Below are positions 10,876 to 12,901 of a DNA stretch of 64,000 bases, one piece after another (the stretch's first letter is position 1; every line of letters starts with the position of its first letter). The position numbers were made by a program, and so were the translations under genes. The DNA is from Octopus sinensis (taxonomy: Eukaryota). The stretch is from positions 50,592,001-50,656,000 of the forward strand of contig NC_043012.1 of NCBI RefSeq assembly GCF_006345805.1, written 5' to 3'. The notes beneath the pieces are model-generated. The model was not told the origin of the DNA. It searched no databases and worked only from the letters and a program-made list of their open reading frames with translations.

Positions 10876-10945
<70 letters not shown>

Positions 10946-11064
10946 GAGGGCATTATATATACATGCCAGAAGGCATTATACATACATGCCAAACGCTAAG
11001 AGGGACATCAGTCATTTCTACCAAAAATATTACTAATCCCACCGAATGCATTTTTCAAAGTAAG

Positions 11065-11129
11065 ACATTTAAAAATATAGACCTGTATCACAGTGATTTC
11101 ATACTTACGTAATCAGCAGGCCTGAATGT
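11065..11129 (-). ncRNA. Type I hammerhead ribozyme, array copy 1 (core has a 3-nt deletion)
   Basis: Same stems as copies 2-4, but the plus strand reads aatcagcagg instead of aatcatcagcagg, so the core becomes CUGAUUA. Confidence 0.55.
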
Positions 11130-11535
11130 ATTATAAATAAACAACGACCCTGCCCCGCTTAAGCCGATCAGCTAACTGATCAACATCAACGAAGCACATG
11201 GGTGAGTTTACATATATTACATCGGGTAAATGGCAAACTTTTACGAATTGCATTTCGGGAGAGGAAAAGTTTTTCGAATAAAAATTTAGCAATTAAGGAC
11301 AACTACTTAATAAGGAAAACTTAACAGAAATTGTCAGGTAGATAGCGTAAAAACCTCATAAGAGAAAAAATTCAAAAAAAATAATTATCTTATTGAACAT
11401 ATAATTTATATATAGAGGGCATATATATACATGCCAGAAGGCATTATACATCACATGCCAAACGCTAAGAGGGACAATCAGTCATTTCTACCAAAAATAT
11501 TACTAATCCCACCGAATGCAATTTTTCAAAGTAAG

Positions 11536-11603
11536 ACATTTAAAAATATAGACCTGTATCACAGTGATTTCATACTTACGTAATCATCAGCAGGCCTGAA
11601 TGT
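11536..11603 (-). ncRNA. Type I hammerhead ribozyme, array copy 2
   Basis: Minus strand: ACAUU-C-AGGCCUG CUGAUGA U-UAC-GUAA-GUA-U GAA AUCAC-U-GUGAU A / CAGGUCU-AUAUUUUUA-AAUGU. This gives the core, stem I (7 bp plus distal 5 bp), stem II with a GNRA loop, and stem III. Predicted cleavage after AUA, between 11557 and 11556. Confidence 0.85.
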
Positions 11604-12011
11604 ATTATAAATAAACAACGACCCTGCCCCGCTTAAGCCGATCAGCTAACTGATCAAATCAACGAAGCACATGGGTGAGTTTACATAATTACATCCGGGT
11701 AAATGGCAACTTTTACGAATTGCATTTCGGGAGAGGAAAAGTTTTTTCGGAATAAAAATTTAGCAATTAAGGACAACTACTTAATAAGGAAAACTTAACA
11801 AGAAATTGTCAGGTAGATAGCGTAAAAACCTCATAAGAGAAAAAATTTCGAAAATAATTATTTCTTATTGAACATATTAATTTATATATAGACGGCATTA
11901 TATATACATGCCAGAAGGCATTATACATACATGCCAAACGCTAAGAGGGACAATCAGTCATTTCTACCAAAAATATTACTAATCCCACCGAATGCAATTT
12001 TTCAAAGTAAG

Positions 12012-12079
12012 ACATTTAATAATATAGACCTGTATCACAGTGATTTCATACTTACGTAATCATCAGCAGGCCTGAATGT
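12012..12079 (-). ncRNA. Type I hammerhead ribozyme, array copy 3
   Basis: Core and proximal stems identical to copy 2. Predicted cleavage between 12033 and 12032. Confidence 0.85.
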
Positions 12080-12490
12080 ATTATAAATAAACAACGACCC
12101 TGCCCCGCTTAAGCCGATCAGCTAACTGATCAACATCAACGAAGCACATGGGTGAGTTTACATATATTACATCCGGGTAAATGGCAAACTTTTACGAATT
12201 GCATTTCGGGAGAGGAAAAGTTTTTTCGGAATAAAAATTTAGCAATTAAGAACAACTACTTAATAAGGAAAACTTAACAAGAAATTGTCAGGTAGATAGC
12301 GTAAAAACCTCATAAGAGAAATAATTTCGAAAATAATTATTTCTTATTGAACATATTAATTTATATATACAGGGCATTATATATACATGCCAGAAAGCAT
12401 TATACATACATGCCAAACGCTAAGAGGGACAATCAGTCATTTCTACCAAAAATATTACTAATCCCACCGAATGCAATTTTTCAAAGTAAG

Positions 12491-12558
12491 ACATTAAAAA
12501 ATATAGACCTGTATCACAGTGATTTCATACTTACGTAATCATCAGCAGGCCTGAATGT
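12491..12558 (-). ncRNA. Type I hammerhead ribozyme, array copy 4
   Basis: Core and stems identical to copy 2. Predicted cleavage between 12512 and 12511. Confidence 0.85.
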
Positions 12559-12901
12559 ATTATAATAAAAACAACGACCCTGCCCCGCTTAAGCCGATCA
12601 GCTAACTGATCAACATCAACGAAGCACATGGGTGAGTTTACATATATTACATCCGGGTAAATGGCAAACTTTTACGAATTGCATTTCGGGAGAGGAAAAG
12701 TGTTTTCGGAATAAAAATTTAGCAATTAAGGACAACTAATTAATAAGGAAAACTTAACAAGAAATTGTCAGGTAGATAGCGTAAAAACCTCATATATATA
12801 TATATTTTCCTATACATAAATACAGGTGTATATAATATACATTTGTATACATATATATATTTACATTTTATATGTATATATACATGTATATATGTTCATA
12901 C

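What the first reader, a model, noticed from the sequence alone, without database searches (positions are those of the whole stretch)
10945..12794. Tandem ~475-bp hammerhead-ribozyme array: candidate cephalopod retrozyme or circRNA-producing satellite
Seen: 3.9 near-identical head-to-tail units with no credible ORF, each with a hammerhead fold at the same position on the minus strand. Predicted cleavage sites at 11086, 11557, 12033 and 12512 would release 471-, 476- and 479-nt monomers. Established: tandem repeats with one type I hammerhead per unit (newt satellite 2, Schistosoma Sm-alpha, cave-cricket pDo500, metazoan non-LTR retrozymes) are transcribed, self-cleave to monomers and can circularise. 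Inference: this is a non-autonomous, RNA-propagated element, possibly mobilised by Penelope-like RT, whose remnants occur in this window. I do not know of such a family described from Octopus, but could not search.
Basis: partly seen in the sequence, partly recalled or inferred. Interest (0 to 1): 0.95.

Follow-up and report, generated by a model that had tools for sequence, protein, structure and literature searches.

The report
Tandem hammerhead-ribozyme repeat (retrozyme-like)
A 1.85-kb block of four head-to-tail ~476-bp non-coding repeats carries a complete self-cleaving hammerhead ribozyme motif in three units, so it looks like a new family of "retrozyme", a known kind of animal mobile element; no activity or expression was tested.

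Summary
The tandem array is real: 10935-12794, period ~476-479 bp, 3.9 copies, 97% matches, no ORF over 63 aa. A complete type I hammerhead (HHR) lies on the minus strand in three consecutive units. It has all invariant core bases, helix I of 7 bp, helix II of 3 bp plus a U·U with a GUAA loop, and helix III of 4 bp. Cleavage is predicted after A at 12512, 12033 and 11557. The fourth unit (site 11086) has lost three core bases and should be dead, so only 479- and 476-nt monomers can be released.

Such a motif is expected 0.04 times per 64-kb window by chance, and none occurs elsewhere in the window. The unit is AT-rich (33% GC) and its RNA is strongly self-paired (z = -5.9). The array sits between (TA)n microsatellites, its ends do not coincide with cleavage sites, and all differences between units are private.

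This fits the published description of metazoan non-LTR retrozymes. Three things count against or limit it: Rfam finds no hammerhead even at E≤10, no other copies could be retrieved, and neither the organism nor Penelope-like RT remnants could be confirmed.

Verdict: a probable new member of a known kind, of moderate interest.

The parts
10935..12794 (-). Tandem array: 3.9 head-to-tail units of 471-479 bp. The functional sense is inferred to be the minus strand.
   Evidence: TRF. Alignment A1. blastn of one unit against the window.
12505..12552 (-). Hammerhead motif of unit 4 (48 nt). C3 is at 12545. Cleavage is predicted 3' of A17 at 12512.
   Evidence: Descriptor scan. Sequence.
12026..12073 (-). 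Hammerhead motif of unit 3. C3 is at 12066. Cleavage is predicted 3' of A17 at 12033. Together with the 12512 site it would release a 479-nt monomer.
11550..11597 (-). Hammerhead motif of unit 2. C3 is at 11590. Cleavage is predicted 3' of A17 at 11557. Together with the 12033 site it would release a 476-nt monomer.
11079..11123 (-). Degenerate hammerhead of unit 1. A 3-nt deletion removes G8 and A9 of the core, so it is predicted inactive.
   Evidence: Alignment columns 267-269 of A1. Not reported by the scan.
10880..10945 (.). (TA)33 microsatellite abutting the 3' end (RNA sense) of the array. The array ends inside the unit's own TATATAAAT tract.
   Evidence: TRF. Sequence. Chance estimate.
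12792..12977 (.). (TA)n-rich microsatellite abutting the 5' end (RNA sense) of the array. A perfect (TA)7 at 12792-12805 touches the first unit.
   Evidence: TRF. Sequence..

Best explanation
The array is a genomic copy of a non-autonomous, non-coding retroelement of the metazoan non-LTR retrozyme type. The proposed mechanism has seven steps. (1) The minus strand is transcribed as a multimer (inferred; no promoter was identified). (2) Each intact unit folds a type I hammerhead: helix I of 7 bp closed by the remaining ~430 nt of the unit, helix II of 3 bp plus a U10.1·U11.1 pair capped by GUAA, helix III of 4 bp with a 3-nt loop, and cleavage triplet AUA. Each hammerhead cuts 3' of A17, at 12512, 12033 and 11557 (predicted from the motif). 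Helix III alone is marginal and is nearly palindromic (AUCACUGUGAU). Two neighbouring ribozymes may therefore act as a double hammerhead, as in newts and axolotl (inferred). [quoted passage not shown] (4) A host RNA ligase circularises the monomers (by analogy with published retrozymes). (5) The circle is compact and highly self-paired (predicted). (6) A reverse transcriptase supplied in trans, possibly of a Penelope-like element, primes at a nick in a (TA)n microsatellite. It runs several times round the circle and gives a multimeric cDNA (inferred from the junctions). (7) This particular copy has since decayed slightly, and one of its four ribozymes is now broken.
For: Tandem array of 3.9 units. 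Complete HHR core and three helices at the same place in three consecutive units, and nowhere else in 128 kb of strand. Chance expectation is 0.043 per window for loose criteria and 0 in 300 windows for the observed stem lengths, which is at most about 3e-4 per 476-bp unit. The local HHR fold is -9.1 kcal/mol, against a local MFE of -11.1. Helix III as a hairpin is -0.2 kcal/mol and as an intermolecular duplex -12.1. The monomer MFE is -126.7 kcal/mol, z = -5.9 against shuffles. The circular fold is -120 kcal/mol with 66% of bases paired, and helix I closes the molecule. GC is 33%. There is no ORF over 63 aa and no Pfam domain. There is a precedent for the U·U at the base of helix II: axolotl HHR_Amex2, about 60,000 copies, self-cleaves and does so better as a dimer (PMC7229834). 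The published definition matches: tandem repeats of 150-450 bp, GC below 50%, no LTR/PBS/PPT, self-paired circRNAs. The Li et al. 2026 criterion is met. Both array ends abut (TA)n, with p of about 0.004 for two random points in this window. PLE-type endonucleases are reported to prefer (TA)n microsatellites (PMC8557442). The array ends lie 140 nt and 288 nt away from cleavage sites, so the template was not an end-to-end cleaved linear RNA. All 12 substitutions and all indels between units are private to one unit, a star-like pattern expected if the four units arose in one event.
Against: Rfam 15 reports no hammerhead family at gathering score, nor at E<=10 even on a 91-nt stretch. The motif departs from the commonest type I consensus at 10.1/11.1 (U·U), at 15.2/16.2 (U-A) and at position 17 (A). 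The units are too alike for any covariation test. Zero substitutions in the HHR is not significant, since about 1.3 were expected. No second copy exists in the window. None could be retrieved from any collection, so a dispersed family is unproven. The self-pairing z-score is the same for the plus strand (-5.7), so it does not mark the strand. No transcription, cleavage or circle data exist. No RT was found in the window. Microsatellites could also have grown from the TA-rich ends of the unit.
Confidence: 0.7

Rival explanations
1. Array derived from a Penelope-like element pseudo-LTR. The units are tandem copies of the non-coding terminal repeat of an autonomous PLE whose ORF is absent here. 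The hammerhead would then belong to the PLE lineage rather than to a separate non-autonomous family.
For: PLEs carry HHRs in their pLTRs and form partial tandem structures (PMC4209133; PMC8557442). Li et al. 2026 find that Xenopus retrozymes are sister to PLE pLTRs. The array is flanked by (TA)n, a PLE-type target.
Against: No RT or EN ORF lies next to the array. PLE HHRs are described as minimal, lacking helix III or having 1-2 bp. This one has a 4-bp helix III and a canonical-like layout. Four head-to-tail units without an ORF is the retrozyme arrangement. The distinction is partly semantic if retrozymes derive from pLTRs.
Confidence: 0.12
2. Ordinary local tandem duplication or minor satellite in which a hammerhead-like string is a coincidence or a long-dead relic. 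It would have no RNA life cycle.
For: No Rfam hammerhead hit. Only one locus was seen. There is a U·U at the base of helix II. One unit is already broken. The HHR fold is not the local MFE. High self-pairing is not strand specific.
Against: A chance motif is expected at most about 3e-4 times per unit. The motif has every invariant base plus three helices in canonical order. The unit has all the ancillary traits of published retrozymes. The star-like divergence and the (TA)n junctions fit a single insertion event better than stepwise duplication.
Confidence: 0.13
3. C/D-box snoRNA-like or other small RNA gene cluster. The UGAUGA inside the core would be a C box.
For: Weak Rfam matches to snoRNA families overlap the motif: snoZ7 at 14.3 bits with E = 2.3, plus snR75 and sR19.
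Against: All these matches are far below gathering score, with E above 1. There is no D box with terminal stem at snoRNA spacing. The unit is 476 bp. The same bases are fully accounted for by the hammerhead core.
Confidence: 0.02

Closest known systems
Metazoan non-LTR retrozymes (Cervera & de la Pena 2020, PMC7229834), e.g. those of the mussel Mytilus galloprovincialis (350-390 bp units)
   Same: Head-to-tail repeats of a few hundred bp. One type I hammerhead per unit. No ORF, LTR, PBS or PPT. Low GC. The monomer RNA is predicted to be highly self-paired. The mussel HHRs also lack the archetypal loop 1/loop 2 tertiary-contact bases.
   Different: The unit is longer (476-479 bp, against 150-450 bp in that paper, though within the 51-972 bp range of Li et al. 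2026). The sequence is unrelated as far as could be tested. Only one short array was seen. Neither cleavage nor circRNA has been shown.
Axolotl HHR_Amex2 retrozyme (Rtz_353), PMC7229834
   Same: A U·U mismatch at the base of helix II. Helix III is more stable than in newts. The published element cleaves better as a dimer, and a dimeric mode is inferred here from the near-palindromic helix III.
   Different: A vertebrate element of 350 bp with about 60,000 copies. Here helix III has 4 bp with a 3-nt loop, and the triplet is AUA.
Newt satellite 2, Schistosoma Sm-alpha and cave-cricket pDo500 (classical hammerhead satellites)
   Same: Tandem repeats transcribed into multimers that self-cleave at one type I hammerhead per unit.
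   Different: Those are abundant, long arrays with the G10.1-C11.1 pair and GUC triplet of the common consensus (from my own knowledge; not tested here). This locus has 3.9 units.
Minimal hammerheads in Penelope-like element pseudo-LTRs (Cervera & de la Pena 2014, PMC4209133)
   Same: Type I topology, occurrence in tandem, likely dimeric action, and association with (TA)n-type targets.
   Different: PLE HHRs lack a real helix III and flank an RT-GIY-YIG ORF. Here helix III is present and there is no ORF.

Membership tests
Hammerhead ribozyme, type I | Invariant core C3-U4-G5-A6-N7-G8-A9, G12-A13-A14, an A15.1-U16.1 pair, and H17 not G | tested here: met
   Present in units 2-4: CUGAUGA ... GAAA ... 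UA. Not met in unit 1, which has a 3-nt core deletion.
Hammerhead ribozyme, type I | Three helices round the core, with helices II and III capped by loops and helix I open | tested here: met
   Helix I has 7 bp. Helix II has 3 bp plus U10.1·U11.1 and a GUAA loop. Helix III has 4 bp and a CUG loop. The fold energy is -9.1 kcal/mol against an MFE of -11.1.
Hammerhead ribozyme, type I | Match to the curated covariance model (Rfam Hammerhead_1 or a related model) at gathering score | tested here: not met
   No hammerhead family is listed at gathering score, nor at E<=10 on 2.3 kb or on 91 nt.
Hammerhead ribozyme, type I | Site-specific self-cleavage | not testable with these tools
   Needs in vitro transcription.
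Metazoan non-LTR retrozyme | Tandem repeat with at least two consecutive units carrying a complete HHR whose MFE is below -5 kcal/mol (operational criterion of Li et al. 2026) | tested here: met
   Three consecutive complete motifs with MFE -11.1 kcal/mol. Their rnabob descriptor itself was not available, so acceptance of the U·U is assumed.
Metazoan non-LTR retrozyme | Non-coding, no LTRs, GC below 45-50% | tested here: met
   Longest ORF is 63 aa. No Pfam hit. No flanking long repeats. GC is 33%. PBS and PPT were not searched specifically.
Metazoan non-LTR retrozyme | Monomer RNA stable and highly self-paired | tested here: met
   -126.7 kcal/mol with z = -5.9. The circular fold has 66% of bases paired. 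The complementary strand has a similar z of -5.7.
Metazoan non-LTR retrozyme | Many dispersed genomic copies (a mobile family) | not testable with these tools
   No eukaryotic genome collection was available. There is no other copy in the 64-kb window. Protein, metagenome and prokaryote-genome scans found nothing.
Metazoan non-LTR retrozyme | Expression as linear and circular monomer RNA | not testable with these tools
   No RNA data.
Metazoan non-LTR retrozyme | Co-occurrence with autonomous Penelope-like elements in the genome | tested here: inconclusive
   No RT domain in the window. GIY-YIG-like fragments lie at 42.6-43.1 and 47.9-48.4 kb. Of 53 aligned sequences of that family (52 homologues plus the window ORF), 7 match Pfam GIY-YIG and none matches RVT.
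PLE pseudo-LTR minimal hammerhead | Helix III absent or 1-2 bp, with the repeats flanking an RT-EN ORF | tested here: not met
   Helix III has 4 bp. There is no adjacent ORF.

The most novel reading that the evidence does not exclude
This would be a live retrozyme family of a cephalopod (if the window is indeed from Octopus). It would produce abundant circular RNAs of about 476-479 nt through a dimer-dependent hammerhead with a U·U at the base of helix II. Integration into (TA)n microsatellites by rolling-circle reverse transcription would give the first sequence-level link between retrozyme insertion sites and the (TA)n preference of Penelope-like GIY-YIG endonucleases.
Probability: 0.3. Interest if true: 0.6.

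Novelty: new member of a known kind. Interest (0 to 1): 0.4.

Why it matters
Retrozymes are the only known genome-encoded route to circular RNA that bypasses the spliceosome. How they are copied back into DNA is still unknown. A new family with clean junctions is a convenient test case for the proposed model of rolling-circle reverse transcription by Penelope-like machinery. This one has both ends in (TA)n, ends that are not at the cleavage sites, and star-like unit divergence. If the host is a cephalopod, it would also add an abundant class of non-spliceosomal circRNA to a lineage whose RNA biology is studied intensively. Taken alone, however, it extends a phenomenon already documented from cnidarians to amphibians, including a mollusc.

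Tried and rejected
1. Rfam at gathering score and at E<=10 gave no hammerhead. The only hits were chance-level miRNA and snoRNA matches in AT-rich DNA. The snoRNA reading was rejected.

2. I looked for other copies in five ways. blastn of the unit against the window gave only low-complexity hits. A search with the unit's most conserved spurious ORF against 5.8 billion proteins gave nothing. Two exact-pattern scans of metagenome contigs and one of prokaryotic genomes gave nothing.

3. I searched for minimal PLE-type hammerheads elsewhere in the window and found none.

4. I searched for Penelope-like RT. Pfam on 72 high-complexity ORFs of at least 75 aa gave no RT. A motif scan showed only a LINE-type FADD near 47148.

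5. I tried to identify the organism. The stitched hAT fragment gave a best hit of 59% identity on an unnamed ENA contig. The stitched GIY-YIG query gave nothing in the word-indexed search. The organism remains unverified.

6. The strand asymmetry of folding (-126.7 against -100.8 kcal/mol) looked like evidence for the minus strand. The shuffled controls differ by the same amount, so it is compositional and was dropped.

7. A covariation test was not possible, because the HHR is identical in the three intact units.

8. I considered building my own covariance model from hammerheads recalled from memory. I rejected this, because unverified sequences would make the result worthless.

Full report
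**Observation**

Tandem Repeats Finder reports a single long-period array at 10935-12794: period 479, 3.9 copies, 97% matches, 1% indels. The four units align with 95% mean column identity. The array is bracketed by (TA)33 at 10880-10945 and by a (TA)n-rich tract at 12792-12977. The longest start-to-stop ORF anywhere in the array is 63 aa, and the frames are broken differently in each unit.

**The hammerhead**

On the minus strand each of units 2-4 reads ...AGGCCUG-CUGAUGA-U-UAC-GUAA-GUA-U-GAAA-UCA-CUG-UGA-U-A|CAGGUCU....
- This is the circular order of a type I hammerhead: the helix I 5' strand, C3-A9, the helix II hairpin, G12-A14, the helix III hairpin opening with A15.1 and closing with U16.1, H17 = A, the cleavage site, and the helix I 3' strand.
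- I wrote a descriptor requiring CUGANGA, GAA, helix II of at least 3 bp (one mismatch allowed at 10.1/11.1), helix III of at least 3 bp, H17 not G, and helix I of at least 4 bp.
- It finds exactly three sites in both strands of the 64-kb window, with H17 at 12512, 12033 and 11557.
- The stems are 7 bp for helix I, 3 bp plus U·U for helix II, and 4 bp for helix III.
It reads CUGAU-UAC and lacks G8 and A9. By established hammerhead biochemistry that copy is dead.
- This locus could therefore release only the 479-nt and 476-nt monomers, not the 471-nt one.

**Chance**

In 300 simulated 64-kb sequences with the window's dinucleotide transition frequencies, the loose descriptor hit 0.043 times per window. 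With the observed stem lengths it hit 0 times. Per 476-bp unit on both strands that is at most about 3e-4. A relaxed search for minimal, PLE-type hammerheads found nothing else in the window.

**Evidence against**

- Rfam 15 lists no hammerhead family here. This holds at gathering score, at E<=10 on 2.3 kb and on a 91-nt stretch round the motif.
- The motif departs from the commonest type I consensus at 10.1/11.1 (U·U instead of G-C), at 15.2/16.2 (U-A) and at position 17 (A).
- I could not run a positive control through the tool, so I do not know how informative this negative is.
- A U·U at the base of helix II has a published precedent. The axolotl HHR_Amex2 family, with about 60,000 copies, self-cleaves, weakly as a monomer and efficiently as a dimer (PMC7229834).
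- The three intact ribozymes are identical, so no covariation test is possible. Zero substitutions in the HHR against about 1.3 expected is not significant.

**Energetics**

- The hammerhead fold of the 61-nt region is -9.1 kcal/mol, against a local MFE of -11.1. This is within reach but not dominant.
- Helix III alone is marginal at -0.2 kcal/mol. Its sequence AUCACUGUGAU is nearly palindromic, and two copies pair at -12.1 kcal/mol.
- Cervera and de la Pena describe exactly this situation for metazoan type I hammerheads that work as dimers in tandem transcripts (PMC4209133).
- The 476-nt monomer, cut from site to site, folds at -126.7 kcal/mol with z = -5.9 against shuffles. Helix I closes the molecule.
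- As a circle it folds at -120 kcal/mol with 66% of bases paired.
- The plus strand has the same z-score of -5.7. Self-pairing is thus a property of the unit and not a marker of the strand. The raw energy difference between strands is compositional.

**Junctions**

- In RNA sense the array starts at ...(UA)n|GAGGUUUUUACGC and ends at ...CCCUCUAUAUAUAAAU|(AU)n. It omits about 45 nt of the last unit.
- Neither end is at a cleavage site. The 3' end lies 140 nt past site 11086, and the 5' end lies 288 nt before site 12512. The template was therefore not an end-to-end cleaved linear RNA.
- Both ends share TA microhomology with the flanks.
- (TA)n tracts of at least six repeats cover 5.2% of this window. 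Two random points would both touch one with p of about 0.004.
- Craig et al. report a strong bias of PLE-type insertions for microsatellites, with (TA)n for Naiads and a similar idea for Neptune (PMC8557442).
- All 12 substitutions and all indels among the four units are private to one unit. No variant is shared by two units. This is the star-like pattern expected if all units arose at once.
- Together these observations fit the published model, in which a reverse transcriptase primed on a circular retrozyme RNA makes cDNA longer than one unit (PMC7761336).
- They do not prove it. DNA-level duplication followed by microsatellite growth from the TA-rich ends of the unit is not excluded.

**Comparison with the known**

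Metazoan non-LTR retrozymes are defined as short tandem repeats of 150-450 bp. They have one type I hammerhead per unit, GC below 45-50%, and no LTR, PBS, PPT or ORF. They are expressed as highly self-paired linear and circular RNAs, and they co-occur with PLEs (PMC7229834; PMC7761336).
- Li et al. 2026 use an operational rule: a TRF array with at least two consecutive units carrying a complete HHR whose MFE is below -5 kcal/mol. They find consensus lengths of 51-972 bp, and most families have at most seven units.
- This locus meets every criterion that can be tested on sequence.
- It fails the Rfam model.
- Copy number, expression and cleavage cannot be tested here.

**Surroundings**

- No RT domain was found in the window.
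- Two inverted foldback-like repeats of about 0.5 kb, at 42640-43140 and 47867-48418, encode fragments of a GIY-YIG-like domain.
- A full HMMER search found 319 relatives.
- Of 53 aligned sequences (52 homologues plus the window ORF), 7 match Pfam GIY-YIG (best E = 1.2e-4) and none matches RVT.
- Two long relatives have an upstream region with a YRDD motif. They have no Pfam RT hit, no PDB relative, and no Cys pair inside the GIY-YIG core.
- The window also holds hAT, mariner-like and LINE fragments.
- The organism could not be identified. ORFs from this window did not turn up in the searches of the protein collection, and the best hAT relative is 59% identical on an unnamed ENA contig.
- The searchable literature contains no description of a cephalopod retrozyme or hammerhead satellite.

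**Verdict**

The most likely explanation (0.7) is a slightly decayed genomic copy of a non-LTR retrozyme family that has not been described. The rivals are a PLE pseudo-LTR array (0.12), a satellite with a chance or relic motif (0.13) and a snoRNA-like gene (0.02). This is a new member of a known kind. It is of moderate interest, chiefly for its informative junctions and, if the host assignment holds, for cephalopod RNA biology.

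Noticed in passing
window 42640-43140 and 47867-48418: Two foldback-like repeats of about 0.5 kb, 89% identical and inverted relative to each other. They carry ORF fragments with a GIY-YIG-nuclease-like motif (..VYKCTV....YVYIGQTADSFKNRY..). There are 319 relatives in the 1.84-billion-protein library. 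Long relatives (P0028, P0085) have an upstream YRDD region but no Pfam RT hit. This is a possible uncharacterised family of RT plus GIY-YIG elements.
   Followed up: partly
window 28141-29578 (+): Degraded hAT-superfamily transposase remnant. Its relatives carry DUF4371 and the hAT dimerisation domain. The best hit is 59% identical on ENA contig ERZ25067582:ctg12062.
   Followed up: partly
window 25608-26261 (+): Mariner/Tc1-like transposase remnant, judged by eye from the translated fragments. Pfam gave no hit on the ORFs of this region that were scanned.
   Followed up: no
window 31673-31885 (+), 60093-60356 (+), 2113-2352 (-), about 47148 (-): Fragments that look like C-terminal tails of non-LTR (LINE) retrotransposon ORF2 (..FKxxLDxFL..IPDxP..), and one FADD RT motif. 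Pfam gave no hit.
   Followed up: no
window 10705-10880 and, separately, 10208-10512 vs 38320-38634: The sequence immediately downstream of the array's (TA)33 looks SINE-like (..GGTTGCATGTTCAGTCCCACTGC..). Its copy number was not checked. Separately, several other interspersed repeats of 150-330 bp recur at 70-85% identity, for example 10208-10512 vs 38320-38634, 24165-24390 vs 38910-39137 and 35194-35448 vs 62724-62973. ARAGORN finds no tRNA.
   Followed up: no
whole window: Extreme microsatellite load: 118 (TA)n tracts of at least six repeats cover 5.2% of the window. There are also many (CA)n, (ATAG)n (10535-10704) and homopolymer-codon tracts. GC is 32% and CpG observed/expected is 0.92.
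   Followed up: partly
window 49579-49678: A run of 100 N, which is an assembly gap.
   Followed up: no
window 10930-11850 (units 1 and 2): These two units differ from units 3 and 4 almost only by single-base deletions (9 and 5), mostly in 2-nt homopolymers. This could be long-read assembly error rather than real decay.
   Followed up: partly
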